From positions 85,877,958 to 85,941,957 of the forward strand of contig NC_068984.1 of assembly GCF_001194135.2 (NCBI RefSeq): a DNA stretch of 64,000 nucleotides. The letters are read 5' to 3'. This DNA is from Octopus bimaculoides. Its lineage: Eukaryota. A model generated the notes under the pieces. The model was not told the DNA's origin. It did not search any database and worked only from the letters and a program-made list of their open reading frames with translations. The position numbers and the translations under genes were made by a program. Of this stretch, positions 4,792-62,884 are shown in pieces; position 1 is the stretch's first letter; each line of letters opens with the position of its first letter.

Positions 4792-5491
4792 CTATATATA
4801 TCTGAACTCCAGGCTCTTTGGAATTATAAAGGTAAGATATAGCAATGGACATGTTGAAAAGTTTTGATTCAAACAGTCGTAATAACCACGAGTGTTTAGC
4901 TGGAGGTGGTTTAGTTTTGTGTTTTGACTTGCATAACTGCTTGGGAGTGGAATCTATAACATGTCCATTCTCTATGGGGTAACCATTTTGTTCTTCAGAA
5001 GGAGTACAGTTTAAATTCAAACTCAAACCCTTTGAATTCAACCGGCTGCTATACAGAGAGTTTATATTGTTGGCATTTTCAAGGTCCATGTGGTTAGTTT
5101 CAGAGGTAGTCACAGCATTGTCTTCATCCATAGCTTCAGGCGTCTGTCGAAGTTGAATAGATTCTTCGTCCATTGGGCAGTCCTCATGATCATCACCAGC
5201 ATTTTCATAATACTCACTGCAGCCTTCATCAATTGGCAATGTGTCGTAATCACCATTTACTAAGGCTGAATCCATTCCCTTTTCTTGTCTGTACAACTCC
5301 TGACTGTCAGTGATGCTCTCTTCCAAAATGCACAAATTGCGATTTAGAAGCTGCTGGCTGTAGGTATTTTTCATGCCCCCATTTATTTCCTGGTGTATTG
5401 TGGGGTAGTGGCCATGTATTTTTTCCCCTACTTCACTGGCCACATTGCTTACAAATGGATACTCTGCTTGAGAAATTTCCATATTGTACAT
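4792..5491 (-). CDS. PI4KB: Phosphatidylinositol 4-kinase III beta, first coding exon (acidic N-terminal region plus start of the helical domain); partial gene
   Basis: The ORF ends in [35 protein letters not shown], matching the PI4KB hallmark [35 protein letters not shown] donor G|GTAAGT follows immediately (intron starts at 4791, phase 1). The track start at 5533 is TTG; the first ATGs are at 5491 and 5482. No downstream exon (NRLF...DFYLPQL) was found in 1-4790. Confidence 0.93.
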
Positions 5492-6072
5492 ACTATATAA
5501 ATGTATTTCTTTACCGTTCAATATGAGTACCAATTATGTGAGAGGAGTGAGAACAGTGTATAGGAGTTTCTACATTGCAATAATATGTGGTTGGAATGTA
5601 AGCTGACTGATTTAGATTCTTTGCAGGACTTCCAGTGGAATCAGCAAATCGTACCATTATGGCATAACACGCATCAATGCACAGACTAAATGTAAACAGT
5701 AACAGGAGTGGAGAAAAACCAAGATAACAATAAGGAACCAAATGGGAAAGTACTGCTAAAAGGTAACAGAAAAAAAAAAATTTAGGATTCTGCAAGAAGA
5801 GGAAGATCTGAAATTATATTGAAATAACTCTTGCAGAAGGTTTAACATTTAATGCAGTGTTTTATCACAAATATTCAAGATTTTTATGAATAACTTATCA
5901 CAGATGGTCAGCTCAAAAGAATAAAGTCTGGTGGATAACAGATGATCCTTGGAAAAAAAAGAATAGGCCAGTTCTTGCTGTAGGTCTTTGTTTCTCAGGT
6001 AACAAAACCACCAGACCATTAAAGTTGGTTCACCGATATTGACTTGAACGTGTCAACCATCAAAAGAGCCAA

Positions 6073-6096
6073 CTGGAAAAGAAGAAATAAAACAGA
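6073..6096 (-). promoter_or_regulatory. Candidate 3' splice acceptor for the PI4KB ATG-containing exon
   Basis: Minus strand reads TCTGTTTTATTTCTTCTTTTCCAG|TTGG, giving an exon start at 6072. Alternative acceptors would give exon starts at 5807 and 5789. Confidence 0.45.
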
Positions 6097-10190: not shown

Positions 10191-13100
10191 AAAGAAATTA
10201 ACAGTATAGGAAGCAAAAACACATGAAACTAAATCTAAGTTATTTTGTCTAGGAATTTACTACTGTAACCAGCAAAGAAACCTCTACACAGTCATACAAC
10301 CACTTAGAGATTGAATCCTAGATTCTTTAAAAAAATAAAACACTAGCATCAATACACTATCTTAAAGACAGCATCTTGGCAGTGACATGGGTTTTGATAA
10401 AGAGAGATTATATTATTTAGTGAACATTTTTATATGAGCAAAGGTAAATGGCAAAACACATGAAAACAAGGAGGTTCAGAACAAGGGTTGAGAATCCCTG
10501 ATGTAAAGGATTTCACTTTTGAGATATAGACATAATTGTTATTTAGTCCCTGACTAGCTATAACTGAACATATGATCTTTCATCCTAAGTTCATACCCAA
10601 ACTTACAATAAAAGCCTTCCAGATGCAACTGTTCATCTTTTTTGTATATGTGGGACTTGATTCTCAAATGTATTTATCTACCTTTTTTTAATGGCATAGA
10701 TATGCATGTATGAAGAACAGGGTTGACTACAAATTTGTTCCTGAAAAATTACTCCTTAGAGTACATACCTTGTCAAGGTTTATGTAAGATAAGCAGGTAC
10801 CCATGCAGCAAGTCTATGTTCACACTACTGATGTCCAATGAAAAAGCAAGGCCAGTACAGCATGGCACCAGCATCATTGCAAACAAATTCAGAACATTAC
10901 AAACCCAAACAGATACACGACATCTCATCCAACACTCTAACAACCTCATTAATCATTGAGCACTTTTGTGAAAAATACTTTGTCTTGTGAAATTAAGACG
11001 TGCTTTTGAAATCCATGAAATCTGCTTAATTTACCATGCATGCACACACACCACAAAATTTACAAGGCATTTTGATTGGGTGTCTTTTACTACAGCCTTG
11101 GGTTAGCCCAAGCCTTGAGACTGAAAATGAGTAGATGGAATCTGTGTGGAAATCCAACAAGCAAACTGTAACTATAATTGAAGGAGCCAACCTTGAAATA
11201 TAGTGTATCAAGCTGATTATGCCTGAGGATTATGTTATTAGTACACATTACTGTGGAATACTCAGTTACTTATTCATTCAATGACCAGGTAGTTCAGGTG
11301 ATAAAATTTCAGAACTGTCAAAACCACATGAGATCCATTTATTTTTACTTTGAGAGAGAGAGAGAGTGTGTAATTATTAGATATGTGTTCATGCATGTGT
11401 ATATATGTATTTGTGGTAGCAGTTATCATTTATCAAAAATAGGAGTAAGCAACATTGGAACTGGAATTTTGCACAGGCAAATATTAATTTCTTTAATATA
11501 GAGAAGATATATTCATTTGATACTGAGGTTTTACTCTATACTTCCTTTGAATTGCCTATTACTATTACACATTCTCAAGCTGTCTTGAAAAATAGGTGAA
11601 AACTCAGAGTAGCCTCAGCTTCAAATAAATTACTAACTACTACATGTATTGAGTAATTTTACTTTTGCTTGTGCACCTAAATACAGATATATAATTGTAT
11701 AAAACCAGGCATGAATGGAGTGAGCATTGATACAGGAGGCTTTCTACTTAGAACATCTATTTTGAAAATATGAATGGTGAGTAATATGCAATAATAGCTG
11801 CTATTGTAACTACAATAACAACAGCATTAACTTGTTTTCTTAGGAACAACCCTGCACTCTTGTTTTGTAAGAAGGAGGATGTACGGTCTAAAGACTTGAC
11901 TTTAATGTATCCTAGTACTTATCAACACTCCTGCAAAGAAAGATAAGACTTACCTTCCAGAAATGTTTGAAATCAAAATATGAGGCATCAAAATAAGATA
12001 ACATAAAGCAATATAAAGATTCCTTACATTGGCAGAAAGCCATCAAGAAATTTATAGGGAGATGAGTATAATCAATACAACTGACAACTGGTATATTACT
12101 TGTACATATGTTGCAATCCTAGTACTTGATTCTTTATTTTATTGACCCCAGAAATATTAAGAAGTTGACCCTAGCATGAGTCAAACTCAGCATTAAAAGA
12201 GCTCTCACAAAATTTCATGAGACATTTTGTAAGACACTGATGATTCTTTCACAACACTATCCTTGATAATAAAAATTGACACAAGAGTGATAAAAGCCAA
12301 AGTCAAGCATGTTAGGATTTGAACTATTATTTTGTCAATCATTTCAATAACACTGATAATACTTTCTAATATTGACCAAGAGCGCATTTAGTGTTTAAGG
12401 TGCATAATTGATTATATTAACCCAGTACTTGGCTTGTACTTAATTTTACTGACCCAAGATAGATGAAAGGCTAAGTCAACCACAGTAGGATTTGAACTCA
12501 AAACAAAGAGAAGCAAAATGTTATAGCCACCACTCAATAATCATAATCATTTCTAACTTAGGTACAAGTGCACAAATTGTGGAACTGGCCAGAGCTGATT
12601 AACTGAAACCCAGCACATATTAGAAATAACATGGAAGAATGAAAGATAGTCAACCTAAAAAGGATTTTAATTCAGAACATAAAATAATGGAATTAAGTAG
12701 TAGAAGGTATCTAATTTTTCATTTCTGTTTTTTTTTTTTTCTTGTAATCATAAAGAATTCTTAGGAATAAGGCCAAAAATTTTCAGAAAGAAGGGTTAAT
12801 CAATTAAAGCAATCCCAAATACTTAGTACTTTTATTGACCCCAGAAATACGAAGAGCAAAGCTGGCCTAGGTATGATATAAAATCAGAACATAAAAGTCC
12901 ATAACAAAATGCCTTGTGGCATTTTGTTAGATACTCTAATGATACTGCCAATTCACCACGCTTAATAATTAATGATAATAATAACAATATATAACTTTTA
13001 TGTAGGAGTTCCCAGAGAGAAGAGGCAAAGGTGGAGAAACATGTTCTGCTATAAATAGTTAGCAAGTGCTTTTTAACTGCTTACATTACTAAATTCAAAT

Positions 13101-23469: not shown

Positions 23470-24428
23470 GAACTCCCAATCTCATGCTTTCCTAGGACAC
23501 TCCAAGTCTCCCAATCTGGTGACAAAGGGCCTCTCGCTCATGCATTTGTGTGAACTACCATGCTTCACGGCAGTGAAACATAGGCCATAACTGCGGAGGA
23601 CATGTGTAGGCTTGAAAGAAATGAAGGTAGCATGAGCCGCTAGATGTGTAATGTCAGTGTGCACACACAACAGAGTGTAAGTGACCTGAGAGAAATGTTG
23701 GACATAAGAAGCATCAGATGTGGCATGCAAAGAGAGACGTTTGAGCTGGTATGATCATGTACTATGGATGGATGAGGAGAGATGTGTGAAGAAGTGCCAC
23801 TCCCAAACAGTTAAAGGAATCCGGAGTAGCAGCAGACCCAGGAGGACATGGGATGAGGTGGTCAAACATGACCTTTGAACGTTGGGCCTCACAGAGGCAA
23901 TGACGAAAGACCAAGACCTCTGGAGATATTCTGTGACTACAAAGACCTGGCAAATAAAGTGAGTTCACGGCTGTATCCTACACCAGTTTCGCATAACCAG
24001 CTCCAGCCCATTCAAAAGTACCTTGGATTGTAGGGCGACCTGCTGTGCTTGAGAAGACCTATTGGATCAAGTACATCAACATCAAATGGAAATTGTAGTT
24101 GTGATACCCGTGCCGGTGGCATGGAAAAAGCACCATCCAAACATGGCCGATGTCAGCGCTGCCTTGAGTGGCTTCCATGCCAGTGGCACATAAAAAGCAC
24201 CAACTGATCATGGCCGTTGCCAGCCTCCTCTGGCCCCTGTGCCGGTGGCATGTAAAAAGCAGTCACCACACTCAGAGTGGCTGGCGTTAGGAGGGGCATC
24301 CAGCTGTAGAAACACTGCCAGATCAGACTGGAGTCTGGTGCACCCTCCTGGCTTCCCAGACCCCGGTCAAAGCGTCCAACCCATGCTAGCATGGAAAACG
24401 GACGTTAAAAGATGATGATGATGATGAT
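23470..24428 (+). mobile_element. 5'-truncated RTE LINE (ORF C-terminus, 3' UTR and (GAT)n tail)
   Basis: Degenerate MLHGSET.AITAEDMCRLERNE...RRL.WY.HV..MDEERCVKKC...RPRRTWDEVVKHDL..LGL, with frameshifts and stops; tail GGACGTTAAAAGATGATGAT. Confidence 0.88.
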
Positions 24429-24438
24429 ATACGCATAC

Positions 24439-24469
<31 letters not shown>

Positions 24470-25630: not shown

Positions 25631-26278
25631 GTGCTTGAGCAAGACCCGGCAAACCAAGTGAGCCCATAACCCGTGGCCTATGCCAGTGGTGTAATCAGCC
25701 CACTTATGCGTACCTTTCTTTCATTGGACACTAAACTCTGCTTGTGAAAACATGTTGAGGCAAGTGAATTCAAAATCAAATTCACTGACGTGGCCGATGA
25801 CAGCACTGCCTGACTGGCATGGATGCTAGTGGAACATTAAAAGCATGATCCGAGCATGATCATTGCCAGGGCCGCTGACTGGCCCCCATGCTGGTGGCAC
25901 TTAAAAAGCACCATTCAAGCAGAGCATGATCTTTACCAGCATCGCCTCACTGGCACATGTGTCGGTGGCACATGAAAAACAACATTTGAGCGAGGTCATT
26001 GCCAGTGTTGCTGGACTGGCTCCTGTGCAACTGGCATGTAAAAAACACCATTTGAGCATGGCCATTGCCAGTACTGCCTGACTGGCCCCCGTGCTGGGGG
26101 CATGTAAAGGCACCCACTACACTCTTGGAATGGTTGGCATTAGGAAGGGCATCTAGCTGTAGAAACTCTGCTAGATCAGATTGGAGCCTGGTGCAGCCAT
26201 CTGGCTCGCCAATCCTCAGTCAAACCGTCCAACCCATGCCAGCATGGAAAGCAGACGTTAAACAATGATGATGATATA
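25631..26278 (+). mobile_element. RTE LINE 3' UTR fragment with five ~65-70-bp tandem units and a (GAT)n tail
   Basis: Shares tail and units with 24100-24428; units start at ~25788, 25853, 25923, 25989 and 26055. Confidence 0.8.
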
Positions 26279-26584
26279 TACATACATACATACATATACA
26301 TACATATAACGGTCAAGTATAAGATTCTTGTTCNNNNNNNNNNNNNNNNNNNNNNNNNNNNNNNNNNNNNNNNNNNNNNNNNNNNNNNNNNNNNNNNNNN
26401 NNNNNNNNNNNNNNNNNNNNNNNNNNNNNNNNNNNNNNNNNNNNNNNNNNNNNNNNNNNNNNNNNNNNNNNNNNNNNNNNNNNNNNNNNNNNNNNNNNNN
26501 NNNNNNNNNNAAGCAAAGAAAAAAAAAATCATGTGAGGGTGGGACAAAGAAGTTTTAATATTTCTGTACTGGTAAGTTCAGTAA

Positions 26585-27430: not shown

Positions 27431-27668
27431 CACGTGTCCTTAAGCAAAACATTGCTCCATTCACTCAGCTGGCAAAAAGGAGTTGTAACTTGTAAGTCAA
27501 AGGGCCAGCCTTGTCACATTCAGTGTGTCATACCAAATCTCCCTGAGAACTATATTAAGGGTGTGTATGTCCATGGAGTGCTCAGCCATTTGTACATTAA
27601 TTTCACAAGCAGGCTGTTCTGTTGATTAGATCAACTGCGACACTCAGAGTTGTAACTAATGGAGACCC
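27431..27668 (+). mobile_element. Old SINE C-related 3' half
   Basis: AAAGGGCCAGCCTTGTCACA...CCCTGAGAACTA...GGAGTGCTCAGCCA...TTAATTTCACAAGCAGGCTGTTC matches the body of 43474-43862. Confidence 0.7.
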
Positions 27669-30600: not shown

Positions 30601-31149
30601 CCCCCATTCCACATATACCAACCAACAACCCAATACCCAAATCAATCTTCAAAGAAACTAAGCCACTTTGATTAACCAATTTAAATTATCTCACAAGATC
30701 TTAATGATGTCACTGGATCCTCTGTTAGTTTCAGCTATGAACATTCCAGTAGTTCAATAAATTGAGCTGTCTACTCATTGAATTAAAATGTAAGTAGTTG
30801 AGTATTCCACAGACAATCTATATCCTTAATGTGATCATCAGGCAGAATCAGTATGATGCCAATGTGTGACATATCTGGAACCTTTGAACCACAGGTACAA
30901 TCCATCAGTTAACGTCTACCAGCTTTCATTTGCAAGGCTCTAGACAACTCAAGGCTTTAGTTATAGACATCTTGTCTAAGATGCCATGCAGTTGGATTGA
31001 AATGAAGACTTCATGATTGCAAAGTGAACTTCTTGATCACTTAATCATGCTTGCAATCATTAATAACCAGTTGATTGACAGAGAGAAACAGCAAGGAGAA
31101 AAGAGAGACAGAGATAGGAGAGAGAATTTGTTAGTTATTTGTCCCAAAA

Positions 31150-31960
31150 ATTTTTGGTTCCTGTGACCAATAAAAGAAATATTTTCCTGATTTTCAGAAA
31201 TAATGATAATGTCAGTAATATACACATGGAACAATTCATCGATATTCATGTGGATTCCCAGGTAACGCACCAACTCTGACATAAGGAGTGCAATACCCTT
31301 GGTCCTATGTATTCTGATTGCAATCTGTTTATGGGTCAACAGCAGGATGTTGTTTGCTTCAGCCCACTTATATATTGCATTCAGGTTTTTCTGTAGTTTT
31401 GAGTAAGCATCAGGGTCCTTGACTACTTGCGAAACCTTTGTATCATCAACATAGATACTGAGAATGGCTGACTGTATGACTGATGGCATGTCTGACAGAG
31501 CCGCAAACAATAGTGGTCTCAGTACAGTTCTCATGGAGACTCCATTTAATAGTGATGTCTTCTCAGAGTACCATTGGCAATGACAACCTGACTCCTATTT
31601 TTTTTTTAAAGTGATGCAGTTTCTGACATATCATCTCTTGATCAACTTAGTCGAAGGCCTTGTTGAAGTCAAGATACATCACATTCACATTTGGATGACA
31701 GAGTCCCTTAGTGGGCAGAAGCCATCCAGTACATTCACGAGCAAGCCATTTTCTTCAGGGAATGTGATCCATGACTTAGCTAAAATGTGAGGTCAGAGAG
31801 TTGGCTTGTAATTCTTAGCATCTGCTCTGTTTCCTCCTTTATGGGTAGGCCATATTATACCTGCATACCTGTTTTTTTTAATTTTGGAAAGTTTGTCACA
31901 TGTGCAGAAACTCTGAAAAAGTATCTGCAGTGGTTTTGCAAGAGCTTTCTTCTGTGTGTA
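31150..31960 (-). mobile_element. CR1/L2-clade LINE reverse transcriptase remnant
   Basis: LAKPLQILFQ...PTHKGGNRADAKNYKP and TVLRPLLF...IYVDDTK...LQKNLNAIYKWA...YLGI motifs; frameshifted. Confidence 0.85.
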
Positions 31961-32115
31961 TTTGTGTGTGTTATAAATTAATTTGTATAATTTAATCATG
32001 ATTTTTATGTCCATTTTTTCCATGTTCGCTTGGGTTGAACAGATCTTCTGTGCATGTATAAGTACTGTGCATGTATAAGTACTGTGCATGTATAAGTACT
32101 GTGCATGTATAAGTA

Positions 32116-32460
32116 CTGTTGTTGGCACTCCGTCGCTTACGACATTGAGGGTTCCAGTTGATCCGATCAACGGAACAGCCTGCTTGTGAAATTAACGTGC
32201 AAGTGGCTGAGCACTCCACAGACATGTGTACCCATAACGTAGTTCTCGGGGCTATTCAGTGTGACACAGTGTTACAAGGCTGACCCTTTGAATTACAGGC
32301 ACAACAGAAACAGGAAGTAAGAGTGAGAGAAAGTTGTGATGAAAGAGTACAGCAGGTGTTTTCGCTCAATAAACACTCACAACGCCCGGTCTGGGAATCG
32401 AAACCGCGATCCTATGACCGCGAGTTCGCTGCCCTAACCACTGGGCCATTGCGCCTCCAC
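32116..32460 (-). mobile_element. tRNA-derived SINE family C, young, with a ~40-bp internal deletion
   Basis: Head GTGGAGGCGCAATGGCCCAGTGGTTAGGGCAGCG, B-box GGTTTCGATTCC, tail GAGTGCCAACAACAG; nearly identical to 43474-43862. Confidence 0.9.
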
Positions 32461-33994: not shown

Positions 33995-34190
33995 ATCATC
34001 ATTTCGTCATTTAACATGTTTTCCTTGCTGGTATGGGTTGAACAGTTTGAGAGGAGCTGGCAAGCCAGAAGATTGCACCAAACTCTGTCTGCTTTGGCAT
34101 AGTTTTCCTGTAGCTGGATGCTCTTCCTAATGCCAACCACTTAACAGAATGTACAGTGTGCTTTTTATTGGTACCAGCACCAGTAAGTTC
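33995..34190 (-). mobile_element. RTE-type 3' tail fragment
   Basis: Reverse complement of TGGTTGGCATTAGGAAGAGCATCCAGCTACAGG...AACCCATACCAGC...TTAAATGAC. Confidence 0.75.
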
Positions 34191-34549
34191 ACCAAATAAC
34201 TTACAAGACAAGACCCTCTCAGCTGAGAAGGGATTAGTACTGAGGGAGATGATTCCTTGCCAGATAATGAGACAGAGTAGATATAACAGGTGCAGTATAT
34301 ATATTTACCTACTATTTAAGCACTATAAGTCATGCTCTTCATTTAGGAAAAGACTAAGGGCTATGGTGAAAGCAAGGGTATTGCCATTTTGAATTCTAAA
34401 TATATTTAAAATATTGTCAATTAATATAACAATCAACTTATAAACATTCATTAACCAAAACCACAAACATTTTACTTTATAATAAAATAAATAATGGGTA
34501 AATGTATAAGCTGCACTCAGCATATGTGTGCGTGTGTATACTGGGTGTG

Positions 34550-42290: not shown

Positions 42291-42464
42291 GAACAGAAAA
42301 GGAAATACAAACTCACTCAAATACACATACATGTAGATATATATATATATANNNNNNNNNNNNNNNNNNNNNNNNNNNNNNNNNNNNNNNNNNNNNNNNN
42401 NNNNNNNNNNNNNNNNNNNNNNNNNNNNNNNNNNNNNNNNNNNNNNNNNNNNNNNNNNNNNNNN

Positions 42465-42517
<53 letters not shown>

Positions 42518-43473
42518 TTTCTTCAGCTTCCATCTACCAGTATTACACACAAGATATTGGGTAACCTGTGGCTACTGTACAGGACACAAGTGGACAATAT
42601 CCATGCAGTGCGATCAAGCAAAGCCTTAACTACATGTTTTCAAAATGAACTTCTAAACCATACCACAATGCCTGCACTTACAACCATGTGCAACACAAAT
42701 TACAGGTCAAAATCTCAAGGGTTCAAATCCCCTGAGGAACTAAAGAACATTTTTTAGTAGGGTATTGACTGTGTATGTTTCTGTATCACTGAGTATGAAA
42801 TAAGTACATATATATGTGCATGTATGTTTTCATGAGTTTAATGGGTGCTATTAAGTGTATAAATTCATAAATTTTCAGAAGTGTATGTATGTGTACATGT
42901 GTATGTGCGTCTATGAAATGTATACACATGAATGAGTGCAATATATGAAAGCTTGGGTCATATGATGAAAGTCAGTCTACAGAGTCGGGGAAAGAACAAA
43001 AACATACTTCTCTGTGCTATAAATAAACCTGTCTGTAAGTGTGTGTGTATGCATGTGTTTATGCAGAAGTGCTAGATATCAGTGCATTGCCCTTGTCAAC
43101 AATGTAATGAGGATGGCATATCTAGAACACTCAAACTAAAAATAAAATGAATACTCATCCACTCTAACTGCAAAATGGATTGGGGTTAAGACTGGAACTG
43201 AGGTTGAGGTAAGATCAGGAGTAAGCTTACAAGCCAAAGAGAATAACAGGATATAGAAACAGAGGATGATAAGGGCTAAGACAAGATAGATAGATAGTAG
43301 TAGAGAGTAAGACTGAGATAGAGATGGAGAGACTAAGCAAGCAGTAGTAGGGACTAAAAAGGAGAGGGAGTGAAATAAAGAGTGAGGTCAAATTATTTTC
43401 AATTTATCCATGTGTGCTTTATTTTTTTCCAGTCTTTCCTCCATATTCAGTACCCATGTTTTACTATCATACA

Positions 43474-43862
43474 TTGTTGTTGTTGGCACTTCGTCGCTTA
43501 CGACGTCGAGGGTTCCAGTTGATCCGATCAACGGAACAGCTTGCTCGTGAAATTAACGTGCGAGTGGCTGAGCACTCCACAGACACGTGTACCCTTAACG
43601 TAGTTCTCAGGGATATTCAGCGAGACACAGTGTGACAAGGCTGACCCTTTGAATTACAGGCACAACAGAAACAGGAAGTAAGAGTGAGAGAAAGTTGTGA
43701 TGAAAGAGTACAGCAGGGTTCGCCACTATCCCCTGCCGGAGCCTCGTAGAGCTTTAGGTGTTTTCGCTCAATTAACACTCACAACGCCCGGTCTAGGAAT
43801 CGAAACCGCAATCCTATGACCACGAGCCCGCTGCCCTAACCACTGGGCCATTGCGCCTCCAC
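43474..43862 (-). mobile_element. tRNA-derived SINE family C, full length, flanked by a 142-bp direct repeat
   Basis: Head GTGGAGGCGCAATGGCCCAGTGG at 43862 and (CAA)n tail at 43474; flanks 43332-43473 and 43861-44002 are duplicates. Confidence 0.92.
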
Positions 43863-43949
43863 TAAGCAAGCAGTAGTAGGGACTAAAAAGGAGAGGGAGT
43901 GAAATAAAGAGTGAGGTCGAATTATTTTCAATTTATCCAAGTATGCTTT

Positions 43950-45900
43950 ATTTTTTTCCAGCCTTTCATCCATATTCAGTACCCATGTTTTACTATCATA
44001 CAACACTGTACCCAATACACAAGCATGTTACAAATCTGCCATTCATTTGGAGAGAGATTACTTATGCTACCAGCAGATATAATAAACTACCTGAGCTTTT
44101 TCCAATCCATTCTTATGCTCACTATTATGCATTCACACCTCCTCCCTCCACAGCTAATTAGGTCACCAAAGTAACTGAAAATATAAATTACTTCTGAAGA
44201 ATTTTCAAACATTAAAAAGAATATATTTCATGGGTGCTCTTACTGCTCACTACCTACTCCTGCACATTTGTTACATAATCTTTCTTCTCTTTCAGCCTAC
44301 CTATGACAGTACAGCAATTCTTTGGGTATTCCAAAGGATTTCTTACCTAATATTTTTCTGCATACATAACCACCTCTTTCATGTCATTAGATTTTTTATT
44401 TTCTTTCCCGCTAGCTAAGGCTTTCTTCTTTGCTAGGTTTCCTTTGAAGCCTCTCAATTCATGACTTTCCTTTCACATTTGGAATTTCTTCTCCAAATCT
44501 TTTGGCAGATTCAACATACAGTTCTCATGGACAACCAGTCTTAAACTCTACTTTTATGGCTTGGAATATAATAATAAACAGGAGGGGTTGAGAAACAAGC
44601 CTCTGATGGATACTAAATTTCTTGCTGAACTCACTGCTAACTCATCTTGCTTCTCAGCACGATTTGCGTATCTCTCACAAACCATTCTTCTACACCTAGT
44701 TTTCTTGGCAACCATCAAATTACAGAACATGATACCCAGTCAAAGGGCTTCTGTAAGAAGGCCAGGTGTAGTGATATGCTCTTAGCCAAGAACATCTCCT
44801 GCAGTTGTCACACTCTCTAAGAGACATCAGTAGTATACCATCTTATTCTCATCATCCTTTAATGTTCATTTTCCATGCTGGCAAGCTGGAGAGCTGCACT
44901 AAATTCATTTGATTTGGTATGGTTTTTACAGCTGGATGCCCTTACTAATGCCAACCACTTTACAGAGTGTCCTGTCAACTTTTACATGGTACCACATGAG
45001 CACTTTTACATGATACCAGCAGAGGACTCTTGTAAGTCAATCCTCTTCACCATGGGGAGTGGCCTTAACACTTCTGCAGTGGAGTACAGGTCTTCTTGAG
45101 CACATCAAAGCACCAGGTATTTCAGTCCTTTGTCATCTCATCTGAAAGTTTCAGTGTCCTGAGGTCATCCTTCAGTACTGTCCTATGTCTTCTTAGGTCT
45201 CCCTCTTCCAAGTATTCCATCTACTTATATCTCATCCAAACTGGTGCTCTACCTTATTAGTTGTGATATAAACTTCATCAGATGTCTTTGTGATTCTTCT
45301 TTCAAAAGCATCACTTTTACTCTTGTAGTTGAAGATACTACTATGCTCATCAGAGTGTATTTTATTATCTTTTAGTCAGGAGAGCAGTACCCGTGGCCAT
45401 TTACAAGGCCTCCAAGACTGATAGGAACAAGGGAAGAAGGCATCTCCCAAATTGGCCACATGCCCAAATGCTTACAACAGAATGTTCATTGTTAAAGGCA
45501 TCCAAAATATCAAGTGGTGGGGGAGGTTAAACTTGATTAAGCTTACCACCTCTCTGTACTATCTGATTGACTATGTAAGGCAAGCCCTGTTTTGCCAAAT
45601 ATTTTCAACATTTTGACAACAATCTCCGATGCTGCTCCTGCCTTCATATTTTTATCATACTTTCAACCATATAACTGTCAACATCAATAACTAGTTCTCC
45701 TGTAGAGTTTGCTTGCAGTAGGACCTCTTTCTTCTACACATTATCCACTTTCAGCAATCTCTCATAGCATTTCTATGTCTCCTACATTTCAACATCAGAG
45801 AGGATAAGTATACCACTATTATTCTGCATACTCTTTTCCTACAAAGCTTGATTAAACTTGATATACTGCTTTGCAATCTAGAATACTTCATGTATCTGAC
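43950..45900 (-). mobile_element. Old, fragmented RTE LINE RT remnant with an inserted RTE tail at ~44850-45110
   Basis: Minus translations include HQRLVSQPLLFIIIFQA..EFKTGCP*ELY (cf. GVHQGSVLSPLLF...GCPWELLYADD) and GAASEIVVKMLK. Confidence 0.65.
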
Positions 45901-46531: not shown

Positions 46532-47343
46532 TACTTGATGACCTCACCAATGCTAGTATCTCAAAAAAGCACCCAGTATACATAGTGAAGTGCATGGCAT
46601 TTGGAAAGGCATCCAGCTATAGAAACCATGCCAAGGCAGACATTGCAGCTCAATGCAGCCATCTGGCTCTCTGTTCAAGTCAAATTATCCAATACCATCC
46701 AACCCATGCCAGTATGCAAAAAGGGATTTTGTGTATACAGCCTCTATATACAGGATACTTTTGGATCTGCAAATCATGTCAGTATGTAGCCATTTCTGCC
46801 AGTTTTGATTCTTTAAATCAGAGATTGTAAGTGGGTGCATATATTGTATGTGTACACACAGACATGCATGTGTGTGTGTACATACATAAATATTAAGGAA
46901 CAAATCCATAAGGTCACATTAACAAGTACATATTATAGCAATATATATATATTATATTACAAAAATCGCAGGTACTTGATGACCTCACCAATGCTAGTGT
47001 CTCAAAAAAGCACCCAGTATACATAGTGAAGTGCATGGCATTAGGAAAAGCATCCAGCTATAGAAACCATGCCAAGACAGACATTGCAGCTCAATGCAGT
47101 CACCTGGCTCTCTGTTTAAGTCAAATCTTGCTCCCCTTTTTCCTTTCCAGTCTTGCAAGTTACTTGGCAACCCCACTAGTGCTGATGGCAATTTAAAAAA
47201 ATCAAATACACACAGTAAAATGGTTGGCGTTAAAAAAACATGCCAAAGCTGACATGGAGCACGACGCAGCTCTGTGACACACTGGATCCTGTCAAACCGC
47301 CGAACCTATGCCAGCATGGAAAACAGACGTTAAATGATGATGG
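46532..47343 (+). mobile_element. Cluster of three RTE-tail fragments; the first two share a ~155-bp duplication
   Basis: 46532-46686 and 46973-47126 are nearly identical; the third tail ends GGAAAACAGACGTTAAATGATGATG at ~47343. Confidence 0.8.
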
Positions 47344-52589: not shown

Positions 52590-53355
52590 TAACTGTTCAG
52601 GGAGCTATTACCTCTGTTAGTAACGAAGAGCCTCTCCCTCAGAGTGAAATGCAGATTGTATGGTACCTGTGAACGAACATCTATGCTACATGCTAGTGAA
52701 TCATGGGTTGTGACTGCTGAGGAAAGGCAAAGACTTGAAAGAAATGAAGCCAATATGCTCTGCTGAATGGGTAATGTCAGTGTGCATAGACAACAGTGTT
52801 AGTAATTTGAGAGAAAAACGGGTATAAGGGGCATCAGATGTAGTTTGTAAGACAGACGACTGTGCTGGTATGGTCATGTAATGTGTATGAATGAAGACAG
52901 TTGCATCAAGAAGTCCTGAGCTCTAATTATGGGGAGAATATGTGGAAGGGGTAGTCCCAGGAAGAAGTGGGAATAAGTAGTGAGAAAGGACCTTCAGATG
53001 TTGGGCCTTGCTGAGGGGATGACGGGACCAGTTTGCTATGCTTAAGAAAACACATCAAGTTAAGTAAAATACATGGTCGTCCTTGCATAAAGCATACCCC
53101 CTACATCCCTCTTCAGTTGAGCATTCCTACTTTTGCAGGCGCCATATAAAAAGCACCTGTGTCAGTGCCACATAATAGCACCCATGCTGGTACTGCATGA
53201 AGGCACCTAGTACACTCTATAAAGTGGTTAGCATTAGGAAGGGCATCCAGCCATAGAAACCATGCCAAAACAGACATGGAGCCCAGGCAGCTCTCCAACT
53301 GTCAATCCATCCCACCTATGCCAGCAAGGAAAACAGATGTTAAATCATGATGATG
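52590..53355 (+). mobile_element. 5'-truncated RTE LINE (ORF C-terminus plus 3' tail)
   Basis: LFRELLPLLVTKSLSLRVKCRLYGTCERTSMLHASESWVVTAEERQRLERNEANML; tail GGAAAACAGATGTTAAATCATGATGAT. Confidence 0.88.
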
Positions 53356-53743: not shown

Positions 53744-53890
53744 GGTGCAGGTGTGGTAAGAAGACTGTTTCCCAACCACATGGTTCCAGGTTCAGTCCCA
53801 CTGCATAACACTTTGGGTGAGTGTTTTCTGCTATAGCTTCAAACCAACCCAAGCCTTGTGAGTGGATTTGGTAGATGAAAAGAAGACCAT
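53744..53890 (+). mobile_element. SINE A head (5' half only)
   Basis: GTGTGGTAAG...CCAACCACATGGTTCCAGGTTCAGTCCCACTGC...AAGCCTTGTGAGTGGATTTGGTAGA. Confidence 0.8.
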
Positions 53891-54247: not shown

Positions 54248-54800
54248 CGTGGTCTTATAAATAAATATCTGGACTGTTGCTATAGTAACAAAGCTAAAGC
54301 ACACAGTGTAACGCCACTTGACACAGATTAACCTTGAACTCTACTGTGCATGCACACTAAGTTTTAATGTTCTAGCTCACTTTTGCTGTTTACAGCAATA
54401 CTTGGAAGGAAGGTGTGTAACGTGTGATTGTTGCACTAATGATGACAGAGATAGTTGAGCAGAGATTCTGCGTCAAATTTTGCCAAAAGCTTGGTGATAC
54501 CTGCTCAGAGGCCTATGCAAAGTTTTCAAAAAGTTTCATTGTTCTTGACACAATCAAGATTTTGTGTAACTGAAACCCAAGTGTCTTTTTGGTCAGCTGA
54601 AAGCAGTTTTGGCACAAACTTGGCAGACACACATCTACCGAAATCTTCAGTGATAATGAACTGAACTGAACTGTAACTAATCAGCACATCCTCTGATAAC
54701 TCACAGATGGTGAGTCGATGATTTCCCCTCACAGCTGCACACACATCTGTGATATTTTTCTCAGTACTGTTTTTACCCTTTTCAAAACCTGCACCTTAGC
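54248..54800. mobile_element. Mariner relic with an internal inversion
   Basis: TA|CGTGGTC terminus; plus strand MTEIVEQRFCVKFCQKLGDTCSEAYAK; minus strand VRGNHRLTICELSED...VSAKFVPKLLSADQK. Confidence 0.82.
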
Positions 54801-55585: not shown

Positions 55586-55704
55586 GCTTACGGCCATATC
55601 ATGTTGAGAGCACCGGTTCTCGTCTGATCACCGAAGTCAAGCAACGTCGAGCCTAGTGAGTACTTACATGGGTGACCACTTGGGAAACCTAGGTGCTGTA
55701 ACCT
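55586..55704 (+). rRNA. 5S rRNA-like copy, 119 nt, probably a pseudogene
   Basis: GCTTACGGCCATA...CACCGGTTCTCGTCTGATCACCGAAGTCAAGC...AGTACTTACATGGGTGACC...GGTGCTGTAACC. Full 5S length, but box C reads TTACATGG instead of TTGGATGG, terminal helix I has a mismatch, there is no T-run terminator and the copy is solitary. Confidence 0.9.
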
Positions 55705-55715
55705 TCATACACTTA

Positions 55716-55878
55716 GGCGCAGGAGTGGTTGTGTGGTAAGTAGCTTGCTTACCAACCACATGGTTCTGGGTTCAGTCCTACTGCGTTGCACCTTGGGCAA
55801 GTGTTTTCTACTATAGCCTCGGGCTGACCAAAGCCTTGTGAGTGGATTTGGTAGACGGAAACTGAAAGAAGCTCGTCG

Positions 55879-56309: not shown

Positions 56310-57245
56310 ATTATTTCCATCCAAATGATTTTGAAGATTGCGGAAGAAATGATAATCAGATGGGGCAATGTCCGGCAAAAATGGTGGGCGGGGCATTGCT
56401 TCCCATTCAAACTACTCCACCCTTTGGAATGTCAGCCTCACTGTATTGGCCAAGCATTATCCTGATGGAAGAGCACCTTTTGTCTTGAAACCAAAGATAG
56501 TCGTTTTTCTTCTTGTGCTGACTTAAGCTGCTCGAGCTGCTTGCAGTAGATCTCCTTTGTTATCGTTTGATTTGGGTATAAAAGTTCGAAGTGGACTAAA
56601 CCTTTCATATCCCACCAAACAGATAACAACATCTTATGTGAGTGAAGACCTTCTTTAGCCTGAGGTGCTGGTATTTCTCCTTTCCCTACTAATTGTCTTG
56701 ACATTTTTACAGAGAACCCATTTCTCATCACCAGTCACTATTCAGTCCAAAAAAGGTTCATTCATGAGATGTGACAGCAAAGAAGAGCACATGATTAGAC
56801 TTGGAAAGTTTGTGAGGCACCCATTGACCCAATTTTCTGACTTTTTCGATGGTACGTAGAAGTTGATGAATGGTTGAATGACGAAATCCAAGTTTCTCTG
56901 CTAGTTCCTCAACAGTTACAATGAGATTTTGTTCTACCAGGGTTTGCAGAATGTAGTCATCAAGCTCTACAGATCTTAAAGGATGAGGCTTGTCTTCTCG
57001 GCTGAAGTTTGCAGCTCAGAATTTCTGGAACCACCATTGACACTGGCTTACACTTATTGTCTGATCCCCATATACTGTATTAATATTCCTCACACTTTCC
57101 ATTGAGTTGTTACCTTTATTTAACTCATAAAGCAAAGTATGTTGAATATGCTCCTTTGTCACTTCCATTATAGCTTTGTCTCATCCCTGCCAACTTTTAG
57201 TTCATGCAATTGAAAAAAACCCGCATTATTTATGGAATGACCCAA
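56310..57245 (-). pseudogene. Near-complete mariner (DD34D-type) transposase pseudogene with the 5' TIR
   Basis: ATG at 57168 (MEVTKEHIQHTLLYE...), HKMLLSVWWDMKGLVHFELL, LFHQDNA and PPFLPDIAPSDYHFFRNLQNHL (YSPDLAP-like motif); TA|TTGGGTCATTCCATAAATAATGCG terminus; stops and frameshifts. Confidence 0.9.
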
Positions 57246-57820
57246 TACGTGGCGACCTCAATAATGTTGGTGGCACTGAACAAAACACTCAGTACATACT
57301 GTAAAATAGTTGACCAAAGCCTTGAGAGTGGATTTAGCAGACGAAAACTGAAAGAAATCTCACACACACACACACATACACACTAGCTTGAAAGACTACA
57401 AATCCCAAGATCTGGAATTTTTCAAGATTTTTGTGTGCATATGTATGCATGTATGTATGTATCAATGAATCTATGCATCTATGTATGTATGTATGCATTA
57501 TGTATTATTGAAGTTGATTCACAAGTTAGAAAAAAGATCACACCCAATATAAAGTCACAGAGTGGGTATCATTTTAAAACGTTTTAAATTAAGATCAACT
57601 CTCAATCAAGATTATTTACCTGACAATTTCATATGAAATCATGTTCTTCTAAGCAGAAAGTTTACTAAACACAGACACGCACGCACACACACACAGTTTT
57701 TCTTTTTCTTTTTGCCCACATTCAGTTCACTGCAGAACGAAGCCCTCGGCATGTTCTCTCCACCAAGCATGGTCCAATGTGTAGGTCATGAATTTGAGCC
57801 TGAGATCATAATGGTTTCAG

Positions 57821-59310: not shown

Positions 59311-60014
59311 GATTGAATAAATATACTATAAATGCTAAATTGTAGTTATATGCTTAAATAGACTTTTGACACAGGTAGAAGATCTCAAATTAGGGCTGCA
59401 ATAATTTTTAAAAACAATTTCGTGCCATACTACAACTCGGCATCCTTTTTTCTTTTTTCCTTTCCTTTTCTTTTTTTTTTTCTTCCTTGGACGATTGCTA
59501 ACTCTTCCATTTCTTGGAGGAAATGGGTACAATGAATGGTTCTCCACAATTCTGAGAGTGAAGAAACGACTCTTATAATTGAATAGTTCTTTATTATAAA
59601 GCATCCGAAGAAGGTCGGAAGATACAACGACCGAAATGTCTGGTCTGAATATATCTGTGTATCATAATGCTGACGGCTCAATTTGCATTTCTAATGATTG
59701 ATGAATGAGGTTCGGTATCTCAATATTAGACAGTTGGGGAGATTCAGAATCAGCCACCGTTCATTTGACTCAACTTTTCCCTTACAATTGTTCTCTATGC
59801 ACAAAATGAGGTACTTATATTAGTGAGCAAGCAAGCTAAAAACAAAGCACTTTGTGAATTGAATTTTGAGCATGATTTCTGTTCTTCATATAAGCAAATT
59901 CACTTCTGCACCTATGAAAGGAATGAACTTTGTGTTCAGACGCAGTGTTTCTAGAACTACCTTATCTGTTGTGTTATCCGTCCGTAAGACAGTAGAGTGT
60001 GATAGAAATGTAGG

Positions 60015-61780
60015 GAGTCGAACCCCAACCGCAAGACATTCAAATAGGTATCACAAGTAAGCCACCACAGTTTCACGTGATTGATTTATAAATCGACCAA
60101 TCGGTGTGAGGTTGTGGCATGATATCCGACTACACAACAATGGTCTTCTAGAATATAACACACACTACCAAGCAAGAACCACAACAATGGTGAACAATCA
60201 CCCACGCAACATTGGTGATCAAGCATCTTCACGAAAACGGTAATGCCTGACACAAGAAAAGCTATAAAAAACCAGCGACAATTGTGACCCGACTCATGAA
60301 GACCAACTCTCCGGCGTAGTAATAGATACTAATCAGAAGGTAAGCATCTGTAGTAAATTCAAAGGGCCAGATGCCGAAAGCTCATAACTTTTGCTACTAC
60401 AGCCCCCCCCCCCCNNNNNNNNNNCCACAATCTCCTTTTGATCTACAACGTTGATATCTTAATACCATGTCTCTTAACGTGTTAGATATGTATTTTTCAC
60501 TCACGAATTTCTCGTCCGCGTGACATAACAATTAAAACCAACTTTTCAATGCCAAGGAACGTTTCGTCTATCTTCGAATGCATGATTTCGAAGCGAATTT
60601 TATCTAGAACCTTCTCGAGTTTGCAGTAACAACCGAACTTAATCTTTTCATATCTTTTCGTTTGAGTGATTCCAAACAACCTGCGCTAACGTATGGCAAC
60701 TTCACCTGTCCCGTTGCTTCCTTCTGAGTATGAAAGCGGAAATTTTGAGAACTTCTACGTCCAAACTAAAAACGTTTTTACCAACTTCTTTGCAAGGACG
60801 TCTTGGATGGTAAGAAGCCTTTCCAACTGTTGAGAAGTATGAAGAGTCGATGTTGTGACAACTTTTTTTCTACACGCTGCCAGCTAGATCACACGATGAT
60901 GGTCTCCACTACATCCATCACAATCAAACAATCTTCTCCGATATTTGTGAAGAAGCATCATCACGAGAATGGTGAACAAACACTCTTCACAACAGAGGCA
61001 AATTTGGCTGCTATTTCTTGCAGGTGGAACAACCAAGCAAACGTACAAGCCATTTTAACACCTGTAAGAAAGCAGAGCTCTACCGCAGATATTATGGATA
61101 TTTCTTCTCCCAATACTTCTAACACAGAAGCTCTTCCTCTTCCATCGCAACATTGTTGACCAAGCATCTTCACTCTACATCCATTTCTTCTATTTCGTCT
61201 GAACTGGTGACATTTCATAAGACAACTAAAGTCAAAATTCATGCTCTGACAGACAGATTCGTACAATTGTAATCACCTCGATATTCTGCCCGTTCGAAAT
61301 CTCATAGTTGAAAGATTTTAATAAATTGATCATTCAGTCTTTGTGAGAGACCTACGATATTCTGTTGGTATCACAAGCACTTTGGTGCTAATGCACACAG
61401 ATGCACCCAAAAATTTTCTTTTAAATTAACCACTCAACCGCTGAAAAACGGCAGCACCAGGAATTAAGCGCGACTACAGTTCTAGGCGCTCTTGGCGTGT
61501 CTTCAGTAAGTCGTGTCTACGATACAATTTCCGTATATATGCTCCTGGTAGACACAGGAGCAGTTTACTTGTCAGAAAAGCACTTTCGCCATTTCTTGGA
61601 AGGAAGAACCTTCACCATTTATACTGATGATAAACCATTAACCTACGCATTACTATCCAAAGCAGATAAATATTCCCCAAGAGACATTAGACACCTTGAC
61701 TATATTTCACAGTTTACTGTGGCTATATGTCATATGAAGGGTGCTGAAAATTTTGTAACAAACCTACTATTTTAACCGGA
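60015..61780 (+). mobile_element. Heavily deleted Gypsy LTR retrotransposon (LTR-like piece, gag, protease start, RNase H)
   Basis: gag motifs LDGKKPFQLLRSM (cf. LGDRKPSQLL) and FCWYHKHFGANAHRC at ~61360-61405; protease LLVDTGA; RNase H KHFRHFLEGRTFTIYTDDKPL...KYSPRDIRHLDYISQF. Confidence 0.85.
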
Positions 61781-61788
61781 AAAAATCA

Positions 61789-61823
<35 letters not shown>

Positions 61824-62034
61824 GCAGTCGTTAAAAAAGAAAAGAAAGAAAAAGAACTGTTTGCAAGTCATACAAACTTATTGCTTAATCATTGTTACAT
61901 GCATTTATTCTGTATTCAATACGGTTTTTTTGTTTGTTTTGTTTGCATTTGTGTTGCATATTGTATGTATTTTCGTTATTGTGATAATTCGTCTTTCCGT
62001 TTACACCGCAAATCACTGGAAGAAGACCCTTGCA

Positions 62035-62620
62035 GAGATTCAAACCCCAACCGCAAGATATTCAGATAAGCATCACGATTGAGCCACCACAATTCCACGT
62101 GATTAATCTATAAATCCACCAATTAGCGTGACGCTGTAGCGTGATATGGTTCCTCAGATGATCTAAAATTCATCCCCTTTTCACCTTCTAAAAACCGTTT
62201 GGCGCCTAAATCAAACATACGGCCTCGGCGTACCGCTATGGGCCCTTTCAGAAAGCAAACCGCAAAAACCAGATCACCTCAGGTACTCGGACAGACTACC
62301 TTGAGCAAGAAACGATTTTAGCCATTCATTCACGATGTACCATCTCACCTTCTACAAGACACAGTGCAGTTCTTTCCTCCCAGTCGGCGGTTATATTATC
62401 AGCAACTTTCGTCCAGCAATAATTATATTAAAAGTTAAGTTTGTAAATTTGCTTCATTTATTATACACGCGATGAAGGTCTCCACCACATCCATCACAAT
62501 CAAACAATCTCCCACATGATATTTGTGAAGAAGCATCATCGCGGGAATGGTGAACAAACACTCTTCACAACAGAGGCAAGTTTGGCTGCTATTTCTTGCA
62601 GATGGAGCAACCAAGCAGAG
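62035..62620 (+). mobile_element. Second, differently deleted copy of the same Gypsy-derived unit
   Basis: 62035-62146 matches 60015-60124, and 62465-62617 matches 60891-61039. Confidence 0.75.
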
Positions 62621-62884
62621 ACTTTCTCGTGGGCTCATTAGAACTAGCCCTTATAATATGCTTTTTACAATCTTGTTAAATTTCTACCACTCATTTTTTC
62701 ACCTGAATATTTTCCAAAGATGTACATAACTTTAAATTTGTGTAACTTCTTTATTATTGATATTTGGAAGAGAAAAAAAAGTTAATAGTATTTTCGTAAT
62801 CAGCCATCAAAATTACATTAGTGTAGAAAATGCGGAAACAATCAGGTGAGAAATTGAAATTCTTCTAGTGGCTGGAAAAAATTT

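What the first reader, a model, noticed from the sequence alone, without database searches (positions are those of the whole stretch)
43332..44002. SINE flanked by a 142-bp direct duplication: possible giant target-site duplication
Seen: 43332-43473 and 43861-44002 are 142-bp copies with 5 substitutions, and they abut the two ends of a full-length tRNA-SINE. Ordinary TPRT duplications are about 5-20 bp. Known: C. elegans Rte-1 (RTE clade) was described with ~200-bp target duplications, and RTE is the most common LINE clade in this window. Inference: this SINE may have been inserted by an RTE enzyme with widely staggered nicks, which would also copy flanking host sequence such as splice or regulatory sites.
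Basis: partly seen in the sequence, partly recalled or inferred. Interest (0 to 1): 0.72.

Follow-up and report, generated by a model that had tools for sequence, protein, structure and literature searches.

The report
SINE with 142-bp target-site duplication
A short retrotransposon (SINE) in this octopus-like genome sits exactly between two copies of the same 142 bases, probably because the DNA was cut about ten times further apart than usual when it inserted; this is rare but already known for related elements, and here it is a single case in a draft assembly.

Summary
Window 43332-43473 and 43861-44002 are gap-free 142-nt direct copies with 5 substitutions. They enclose a 387-nt SINE on the minus strand (43474-43860). 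The SINE's ends are fixed independently by a second copy at 32116-32458, and they meet the repeats to within 0-2 nt.

The 142-mer occurs nowhere else in the window. Its two copies have diverged 2.8% outside CpG sites, matching the two SINE copies (2.9%). The duplication is therefore about as old as the insertion.

The best reading (about 0.7) is one target-primed insertion whose second-strand break fell 140-142 nt from the first.

- The other copy of the same SINE has an ordinary 10-13-nt duplication.
- No RTE element could be linked to the SINE.
- The only reverse-transcriptase remnant found does not carry RTE-type motifs as I remember them.

Duplications over 100 bp are already documented for L1, R9 and Dualen elements. 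A second local duplication of about 154 nt lies 3 kb away and is not a target-site duplication, and the assembly is a gapped draft, so artefact and unrelated duplication remain minor rivals. The decisive empty-site test could not be run with the data available.

The parts
43332..43473 (.). Left copy of the 142-nt duplication. It is the 3'-side target-site duplication in the SINE's own (minus-strand) orientation. Its last base, 43473, is the inferred primer end for first-strand cDNA synthesis.
   Evidence: 142 nt, 96.5% identical to 43861-44002, with abrupt loss of identity outside.
43474..43860 (-). Full-length 387-nt SINE with a tRNA-like head, a body and a 3' module ending in a (CAA)n tail.
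   Evidence: same 5' and 3' ends as the copy at 32116-32458 (94% identity). The 3' module has distant relatives at 27489-27668(+), 30732-30900(-) and 11168-11302(+).
43840..43850 (-). Pol III A box, TGGCCCAGTGG (SINE positions 11-21).
   Evidence: for coordinates. It fits the TRGCNNAGTGG consensus (established knowledge). No tRNA model match.
43796..43807 (-). Pol III B-box-like motif, GGTTTCGATTCC (SINE positions 54-65). It has one extra T relative to GGTTCGANNCC.
   Evidence: for coordinates. The consensus is from established knowledge.
43474..43485 (-). (CAA)4 simple-repeat tail of the SINE.
   Evidence: A (CAA)n tail is common in animal RTE elements and RTE-dependent SINEs (PMC6007223, Table 2), but it is not diagnostic.
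43492..43537 (-). Two predicted 3' stem-loops upstream of the tail: GTTCCGTTGATC/GATCAACTGGAAC and CGTCG/CGACG.
   Evidence: They appear in the MFE structure, but the fold is no better than shuffles (z = -1.0), so they are only suggestive.
43861..44002 (.). Right copy of the 142-nt duplication. It is the 5'-side target-site duplication in the SINE's orientation. Bases 43861-43862 ('AC') may instead be the SINE's first two bases.

Best explanation
One retroposition event produced both the SINE and the duplication.

The inferred steps are these. The SINE RNA was copied into the genome by target-primed reverse transcription, using a LINE-encoded enzyme of undetermined clade. The window's + strand was nicked just after the base now at 43473 (= 44002), and that 3'-OH primed cDNA synthesis from the (CAA)n tail. 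The opposite strand was broken not about 10 nt away but 140-142 nt away, at the position now between 43331 and 43332. [quoted passage not shown]

Shown: the structure [142][tail-SINE-head][142] with exact junctions, the uniqueness of the 142-mer, and the equal age of repeat and insert.

Inferred: the nick positions, and the idea that the distant second break was an occasional accident (a pre-existing nick or gap, or late or misplaced second-strand cleavage) rather than a property of the enzyme. The other copy of this SINE has a normal 10-13-nt duplication.
For: (1) Both inner ends of the repeat coincide, within 0-2 nt, with SINE termini defined independently from the copy at 32116-32458. For an unrelated duplication this double coincidence would be expected at roughly 1e-4 or less (my estimate).
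(2) There is no filler DNA and no deletion at either junction.
(3) The 142-mer has no other copy in the 64 kb and is absent from the flanks of SINE copy 2, so it is target DNA and not part of the element.
(4) Divergence matches. The repeat pair differs at 5/142 sites (1 CpG transition, 4 others = 2.8%). The two SINE copies differ at 19/344 sites (9 CpG transitions, 10 others = 2.9%).
(5) The junctions lie inside a 6.1-kb gap-free contig stretch (42465-48606), with no N at or near them.
(6) There is precedent. L1 duplications over 100 bp occur in under 10% of HeLa events and in 57-91% of events in NER-deficient cells, and are attributed to a distal second nick (PMC5223499). R9 makes a 126-bp duplication and Dualen longer ones (PMC9977147).
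Against: This is a single case in a short-read draft assembly with 11 gaps, and no reads or second individual could be examined. The empty site could not be retrieved from any relative.

A second local duplication of similar size and age lies 3 kb away (46532-46685 and 46973-47126; 154 nt, 95.5%, spacing 441). It cannot be a target-site duplication, so some other process or artefact makes duplications of about 150 nt here.

The 142-nt length is about ten times the usual size for RTE, L1 or L2-type insertions (PMC6007223, PMC4245944).
Confidence: 0.7

Rival explanations
1. Assembly artefact. The SINE, or an indel, is heterozygous, and the assembler or scaffolder strung pieces of the two haplotypes in series (L-A1-SINE-A2-R). 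The second 142-mer would then be the other allele rather than a real duplicate.
For: The window is a draft with 11 N-gaps, the nearest at 42352-42464. A second duplication with similar size, identity and spacing lies 3 kb away (154 nt, 95.5%, spacing 441). It would fit the same artefact with a 287-bp heterozygous indel.
Against: The SINE-head/142-mer junction has no N and falls exactly at the canonical SINE 5' end, so such a junction needs reads that span it. The artefact would require 3.5-4.5% 'allelic' divergence. It would also leave the real insertion with a duplication of 3 nt or less, unlike copy 2. There are no adjacent (spacerless) haplotype duplications anywhere in the window.
Confidence: 0.12
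2. A DNA-level local duplication unrelated to the insertion (template switching, unequal exchange or templated repair). This could be a pre-existing tandem pair into whose junction the SINE landed, or a later copy of the 142-mer placed beyond the SINE.
For: Such duplications exist here. The pair 46532-46685 and 46973-47126 is a partial copy of a dispersed repeat whose spacer continues that repeat's consensus, so it is not an insertion-flanking duplication.
Against: It requires both inner boundaries to coincide with the SINE termini to within 2 nt. It also requires the SINE to have made no duplication of its own. It needs two or more rare events where one suffices. The equal age of repeat and SINE would be a coincidence.
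Confidence: 0.1
3. The two 142-mers are overlapping ends of two separate copies of an older dispersed repeat (possibly a decayed LINE) that happen to flank the SINE.
For: On the minus strand the 142-mer and its right flank translate to ...HACVLGTVLYDSKTWVLNMDERLEKNKAYLDKLKII. This loosely resembles the '...VLLYGSETW...' region that follows the RT domain in many LINEs (from my memory).
Against: There is no other copy of the 142-mer in 64 kb. Pfam gives no hit for the peptide. A 3'-truncated copy ending at the SINE head and a 5'-truncated copy starting at the SINE tail are both required. The 96.5% identity with zero indels would also be unusual for an old family.
Confidence: 0.05

Closest known systems
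L1 insertions with target-site duplications over 100 bp (HeLa assays; frequent in NER-deficient cells): Gilbert 2002/2005 and Symer 2002, as summarised in PMC5223499
   Same: A non-LTR retroposon sits exactly between long direct copies of target DNA. The explanation is a second-strand break far from the endonuclease nick. These are rare outliers against a short modal length.
   Different: L1 has a poly(A) tail and a TT/AAAA target, and the events were recovered in cultured human cells. Here the element is a tRNA-like SINE with a (CAA)n tail, fixed in (or at least assembled from) a cephalopod germline genome. The enzyme is unknown.
R9 rDNA-specific LINEs of bdelloid rotifers (126-bp duplication; Gladyshev & Arkhipova 2009, cited in PMC9977147)
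   Same: The target-site duplication is of nearly the same size (126 vs 140-142 bp) and flanks a non-LTR element.
   Different: R9 is site-specific, has a restriction-like endonuclease, and makes the same long duplication at every insertion. Here the other copy of the same SINE has a 10-13-nt duplication, so length is not a fixed property.
Dualen LINEs of Chlamydomonas (PMC9977147)
   Same: Very long, variable duplications flank de novo non-LTR insertions.
   Different: They are attributed to two endonuclease domains in one element. There is no evidence for such an enzyme here.
RTE-clade LINEs and their SINEs (PMC6007223, PMC1291365, PMC2887409)
   Same: There is a simple-repeat tail; (CAA)n is listed for horse, elephant and hyrax RTEs and their SINEs. 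The duplication of copy 2 falls in the RTE modal range of 10-12 bp.
   Different: The defining shared LINE/SINE 3' end was not found. The 142-nt duplication is far outside the published 7-15 bp range. The T-stretch about 10 nt upstream of the duplication is not evident at either copy (n=2).
C. elegans Rte-1 (Youngman et al. 1996)
   Different: This could not be verified because the paper is not held. PMC6007223 found duplications in its 10-49-bp search range for 30 of 53 C. elegans RTE-1 copies, so long ones are not the rule even there.

Membership tests
tRNA-derived SINE | Internal pol III A and B boxes in the 5' head | tested here: met
   The A box TGGCCCAGTGG (43840-43850) fits TRGCNNAGTGG. 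The B box GGTTTCGATTCC (43796-43807) fits GGTTCGANNCC with one extra T (the consensus sequences are from established knowledge).
tRNA-derived SINE | Head recognisable as a tRNA by tRNA models | tested here: not met
   ARAGORN finds no tRNA in the window. Rfam gives no match at E<=1 over 43300-44050.
tRNA-derived SINE | Dispersed copies sharing the same 5' and 3' termini and ending in a simple repeat | tested here: met
   A second copy at 32116-32458 has identical termini and a CAACAACA tail. SINE-derived stretches also occur in two O. bimaculoides UniRef proteins.
Target-site duplication of a TPRT insertion | Direct repeats abut both element termini with no intervening bases | tested here: met
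   The junctions are exact to 0-2 nt.
Target-site duplication of a TPRT insertion | The repeated sequence is host target and not part of the element | tested here: met
   The 142-mer is absent from the flanks of copy 2 and from the rest of the window.
Target-site duplication of a TPRT insertion | The repeat copies are as old as the insert | tested here: met
   Non-CpG divergence is 2.8% for the repeat pair and 2.9% for the SINE pair. With n=2 SINE copies this is only a rough check.
Target-site duplication of a TPRT insertion | The empty site (other allele or related species) has one copy and no element | not testable with these tools
   No called gene exists at the locus in the public collection. 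A related octopod run (SRR11869391) is visible only at the PI4KB exon. Scans of the metagenome and genome collections found nothing real.
Target-site duplication of a TPRT insertion | Length within the usual range (about 5-20 bp) | tested here: not met
   The length is 140-142 nt. This is the anomaly under study.
RTE-mobilised SINE | The 3' end is homologous to the 3' end of an RTE-clade LINE | tested here: inconclusive
   The 3' module has distant relatives at 27.5, 30.8 and 11.2 kb. These look like other SINE-like elements and share a non-coding upstream extension. No RTE element was identified.
RTE-mobilised SINE | A partner RT of RTE type is present | tested here: not met
   The only RT remnant (31.0-31.7 kb, minus strand) scores RVT_1 E=7.8e-6. 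Its motifs are YLDFNKAFD and YVDDTK. As I recall them, RTE has NWRGI / DFxKAFDS / FADD[IL]. This is an assignment from memory, not a phylogeny.
RTE-mobilised SINE | Microsatellite-like tail | tested here: met
   A (CAA)4 tail. (CAA)n is listed for several animal RTEs and their SINEs (PMC6007223, Table 2). It is not diagnostic.
RTE-mobilised SINE | Insertion signature of a T stretch about 10 nt upstream of the duplication start (PMC6007223) | tested here: not met
   Upstream of the 5' duplication, copy 1 reads ...gtgtattgggtacagtgt|T and copy 2 reads ...atctttatgtcctatatgtc|C. Neither has a T run at -10. With n=2 the test is weak.

The most novel reading that the evidence does not exclude
The LINE machinery that moves this octopus SINE might place its second-strand break roughly one nucleosome length (about 140-150 nt) from the first at an appreciable frequency. 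Retroposition would then be a regular source of local duplications of about 150 bp in cephalopod genomes. Published surveys would have missed them because they cap duplication length at 30-49 bp and require perfect matches (PMC2912911, PMC6007223). The nearby 154-nt duplication might even be a by-product of the same process.
Probability: 0.1. Interest if true: 0.6.

Novelty: new member of a known kind. Interest (0 to 1): 0.3.

Why it matters
If real, this is a natural germline example of a SINE insertion that duplicated 142 bp of host DNA. Events of this kind are well documented only for L1 in cultured cells and for a few specialised LINEs. Standard genome-wide surveys exclude them by design, because they set upper length limits of 30-49 bp and require perfect matches.

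Such events can duplicate small functional elements, and they create substrates for later deletion of the insert by recombination. As a single case it does not change what is known about TPRT. Its value lies in prompting a genome-wide count in octopus, where SINEs are very abundant.

Tried and rejected
(1) Finding the orthologous or allelic locus.
- A query of eight concatenated ORF translations from 42.5-44.8 kb found no protein in the 5.8-billion collection.
- The PI4KB exon at 4787-5533 found a 94%-identical Logan protein. Its 2.1-kb contig (SRR11869391) is 91% identical to window 4603-6558, but it lies 38 kb from the locus.
- A six-frame SINE query hit only two O. bimaculoides UniRef proteins that have no contigs on record.
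- An ENA contig carrying a 41%-identical exon has no copy of the SINE.

(2) Exact-pattern scans for SINE 22-26-mers. The metagenome collection gave one chance match in an unrelated contig, and the genome collection gave none.

(3) Looking for the partner LINE. BLAST, nhmmer and a motif scan found one decayed RT and three distant relatives of the 3' module, with no demonstrable link between them.

(4) Something special about the target DNA. It has no notable single-strand structure (z = +0.46) and no other copies.

(5) The SINE 3' hairpins. They are predicted but not better than shuffles.

(6) Verifying the Rte-1 claim of about 200 bp. The paper is not held, and the citing papers I read do not repeat the figure.

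(7) Rejected: unequal crossing-over between flanking SINEs, because there are no SINEs outside the repeats. Also rejected: a tandem array, because TRF finds no long-period repeat.

Full report
WHAT IS THERE

The window is AT-rich, repeat-rich animal DNA from a gapped draft assembly with 11 runs of N. It carries a PI4KB-like exon at 4787-5533 on the minus strand. That exon's closest public relative is a Logan contig from run SRR11869391, 91% identical in DNA including non-coding flanks. A SINE-derived peptide query hits two Octopus bimaculoides proteins. The source is therefore an octopod, but the exact species was not established.

At the finding, 43332-43473 and 43861-44002 are 142-nt direct copies. 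They have no gaps and 5 substitutions. Similarity ends abruptly on both outer sides. The 142-mer has no third copy in the 64 kb.

The 387 nt between the copies are a SINE on the minus strand:
- The head is GGAGGCGCAATGGCCCAGTGG... at 43860.
- It has an A box (43840-43850) and a near-consensus B box (43796-43807).
- It has a 3' module with two predicted hairpins.
- It ends in a (CAA)4 tail at 43474-43485.

Neither ARAGORN nor Rfam recognises a tRNA there. 'tRNA-derived' therefore rests on the pol III boxes alone.

ARE THE REPEATS REALLY AT THE SINE'S ENDS?

A second copy of the same SINE lies at 32116-32458, also on the minus strand. It is 94% identical and has a 41-nt internal deletion. In the pairwise alignment, homology begins at (GT)GGAGGCG and ends at GCCAACAACA in both copies. 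This fixes the termini independently of the repeats.

In the copy under study the 142-mer starts 0-2 nt from the head and ends 0 nt from the tail. The 2-nt uncertainty is the 'GT' that precedes GGAGG in both copies, which may belong to the SINE. There is no filler DNA at either junction.

Copy 2 has an ordinary duplication. CTTATACATG (10 nt) occurs on both sides, or 13 nt with one mismatch. On its tail side a perfect 17-mer containing that duplication is repeated 4.2 times.

AGE

The two SINE copies differ at 19 of 344 aligned sites. Nine are CpG transitions and ten are other changes (2.9%). The two 142-mers differ at 5 sites, one a CpG transition and four others (2.8%).

If the two SINE copies are of similar age, this is what is expected when the duplication arose with the insertion. 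With only two SINE copies, the argument shows consistency and is not a proof.

BEST EXPLANATION

A single target-primed reverse-transcription event fits best. The + strand was nicked after the base now at 43473/44002, and that end primed cDNA synthesis on the (CAA)n tail. The other strand was broken 140-142 nt away, at the site now between 43331 and 43332. Fill-in synthesis then duplicated the intervening DNA.

The structure is shown. The nick positions and the cause of the long stagger are inferred.

The sister copy has a short duplication, and published RTE, L1 and L2-type duplications are 5-20 bp (PMC6007223; PMC4245944; PMC2912911). I therefore take the long stagger to be an occasional accident of second-strand breakage and not an enzyme property.

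Exactly this has been described for L1. Duplications over 100 bp occur in under 10% of HeLa events and in 57-91% of events in NER-deficient cells, some exceeding 1 kb. The authors propose use of a distant unrelated nick (PMC5223499). R9 (126 bp) and Dualen elements show that non-LTR insertions can carry duplications of this size (PMC9977147).

The target itself shows nothing special. It has no unusual single-strand structure and no T-run signature.

WHAT IS NOT SUPPORTED

The attribution to an RTE enzyme is untested. The (CAA)n tail and the 10-13-nt duplication of copy 2 are compatible with RTE (PMC6007223), but neither is diagnostic.

The SINE's 3' module has distant relatives at 27489-27668, 30732-30900 and 11168-11302. 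Two of these share a further non-coding upstream stretch and look like other SINE-type elements rather than a LINE 3' end.

Only one reverse-transcriptase remnant could be found, at 31.0-31.7 kb on the minus strand. It scores RVT_1 E=7.8e-6 after the frames are joined. Its motifs (NY.P, YLDFNKAFD, YVDDTK) are, from my memory of LINE clades, of the CR1/L2/Jockey type and not the RTE type.

The statement that RTE is the commonest LINE clade in the window could not be reproduced. The Rte-1 figure of about 200 bp could not be checked. One survey found duplications in its 10-49-bp search range for 30 of 53 C. elegans RTE-1 copies (PMC6007223).

RIVALS

(a) Assembly artefact from a heterozygous insertion. 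This is a draft assembly. A second pair of similar size, identity and spacing lies 3 kb away (46532-46685 and 46973-47126; 154 nt, 95.5%).

That second pair cannot be a target-site duplication. Its spacer begins with the continuation of the dispersed repeat to which the left copy belongs. It shows that something else, biological or technical, makes duplications of about 150 nt here.

Against an artefact at the SINE:
- The junctions are N-free and fall exactly at the canonical SINE ends.
- 3.5% allelic divergence would be needed.
- The true insertion would be left with almost no duplication.

(b) An unrelated DNA-level duplication. This needs a double coincidence of boundaries and at least two events.

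(c) Two overlapping copies of an old repeat. The 142-mer translates to a peptide that loosely recalls a LINE region. However, it has no Pfam hit and no other copy.

A self-comparison of the whole window found only three local direct repeats longer than 100 nt. They are this one, the 154-nt pair, and two copies of an LTR-type element at 60894 and 62470.

WHAT COULD NOT BE DONE

The decisive empty-site comparison could not be run. The public protein-indexed collections hold no called gene at this locus. The related octopod run is reachable only at the PI4KB exon 38 kb away. Pattern scans of the metagenome and prokaryote collections found only a chance hit. The window supplies only two copies of the family, so no length distribution can be drawn.

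VERDICT

Reading it as a giant target-site duplication is the most likely explanation (about 0.7). The RTE-specific mechanism and any family-wide tendency are unsupported.

It is a new instance of a known, rare outcome of non-LTR retroposition. It is of modest interest unless a genome-wide survey shows such events are common in octopus.

Noticed in passing
window 46532-46685 and 46973-47126: A second local direct duplication: 154 nt, 95.5% identical, 441 nt start to start. Both copies belong to a dispersed SINE-like family with other members at 53179-53352, 26120-26308, 24267-24455, 34086-34247(-) and 44850-44960(-), but they are far closer to each other (95%) than to those members (about 79%). 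The spacer starts with the continuation of the family consensus, so this is not a target-site duplication. Its size, age and spacing resemble the finding.
   Followed up: partly
window 32048-32119: A perfect 17-mer (CTGTGCATGTATAAGTA) is repeated 4.2 times directly against the tail of the second SINE copy. The unit contains that copy's 10-nt target-site duplication plus adjacent target bases. This could be amplification of the target site at the 3' junction or a later minisatellite expansion.
   Followed up: partly
window 55586-55704 (+): A full-length 5S rRNA match (101 bits, E=5.6e-21) embedded among SINE-like repeats; related flanks lie at 53751-53881, 55731-55861 and 57311-57356. It may be a 5S gene, a pseudogene or a 5S-derived SINE.
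   Followed up: no
window 4787-5533 (-): A long exon encoding the N-terminal region of a PI4KB-like kinase (...[35 protein letters not shown]). The best public match is 94% identical (Logan run SRR11869391), so the window's own species appears not to be in the protein collection.
   Followed up: partly
window 31040-31700 (-): A decayed, frameshifted reverse-transcriptase remnant (RVT_1 E=7.8e-6) with motifs YLDFNKAFD and YVDDTK. It is the only recognisable LINE RT in the window, and by motif (from my memory) it does not look like RTE.
   Followed up: partly
window 43880-44060 (-): The duplicated 142-mer and its right flank translate on the minus strand to HACVLGTVLYDSKTWVLNMDERLEKNKAYLDKLKII. 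This faintly resembles the conserved stretch after the RT domain of many LINEs, so the SINE may have landed in an old LINE fragment. Pfam gives no hit.
   Followed up: partly
window 60009-62650: Two partial copies of an LTR-retrotransposon-like sequence lie about 1.5-2 kb apart (60894-61039 vs 62470-62617 at 92%; 60009-60125 vs 62031-62147 at 80%). They lie around an RNase H/pol-like ORF at 61425-61772.
   Followed up: no
window 54529-54795 (-) and 56441-57015 (-): ORF fragments that look like a mariner/Tc1-type transposase (e.g. ...SVWWDMKGLVHFELL...). This was judged by eye only.
   Followed up: no
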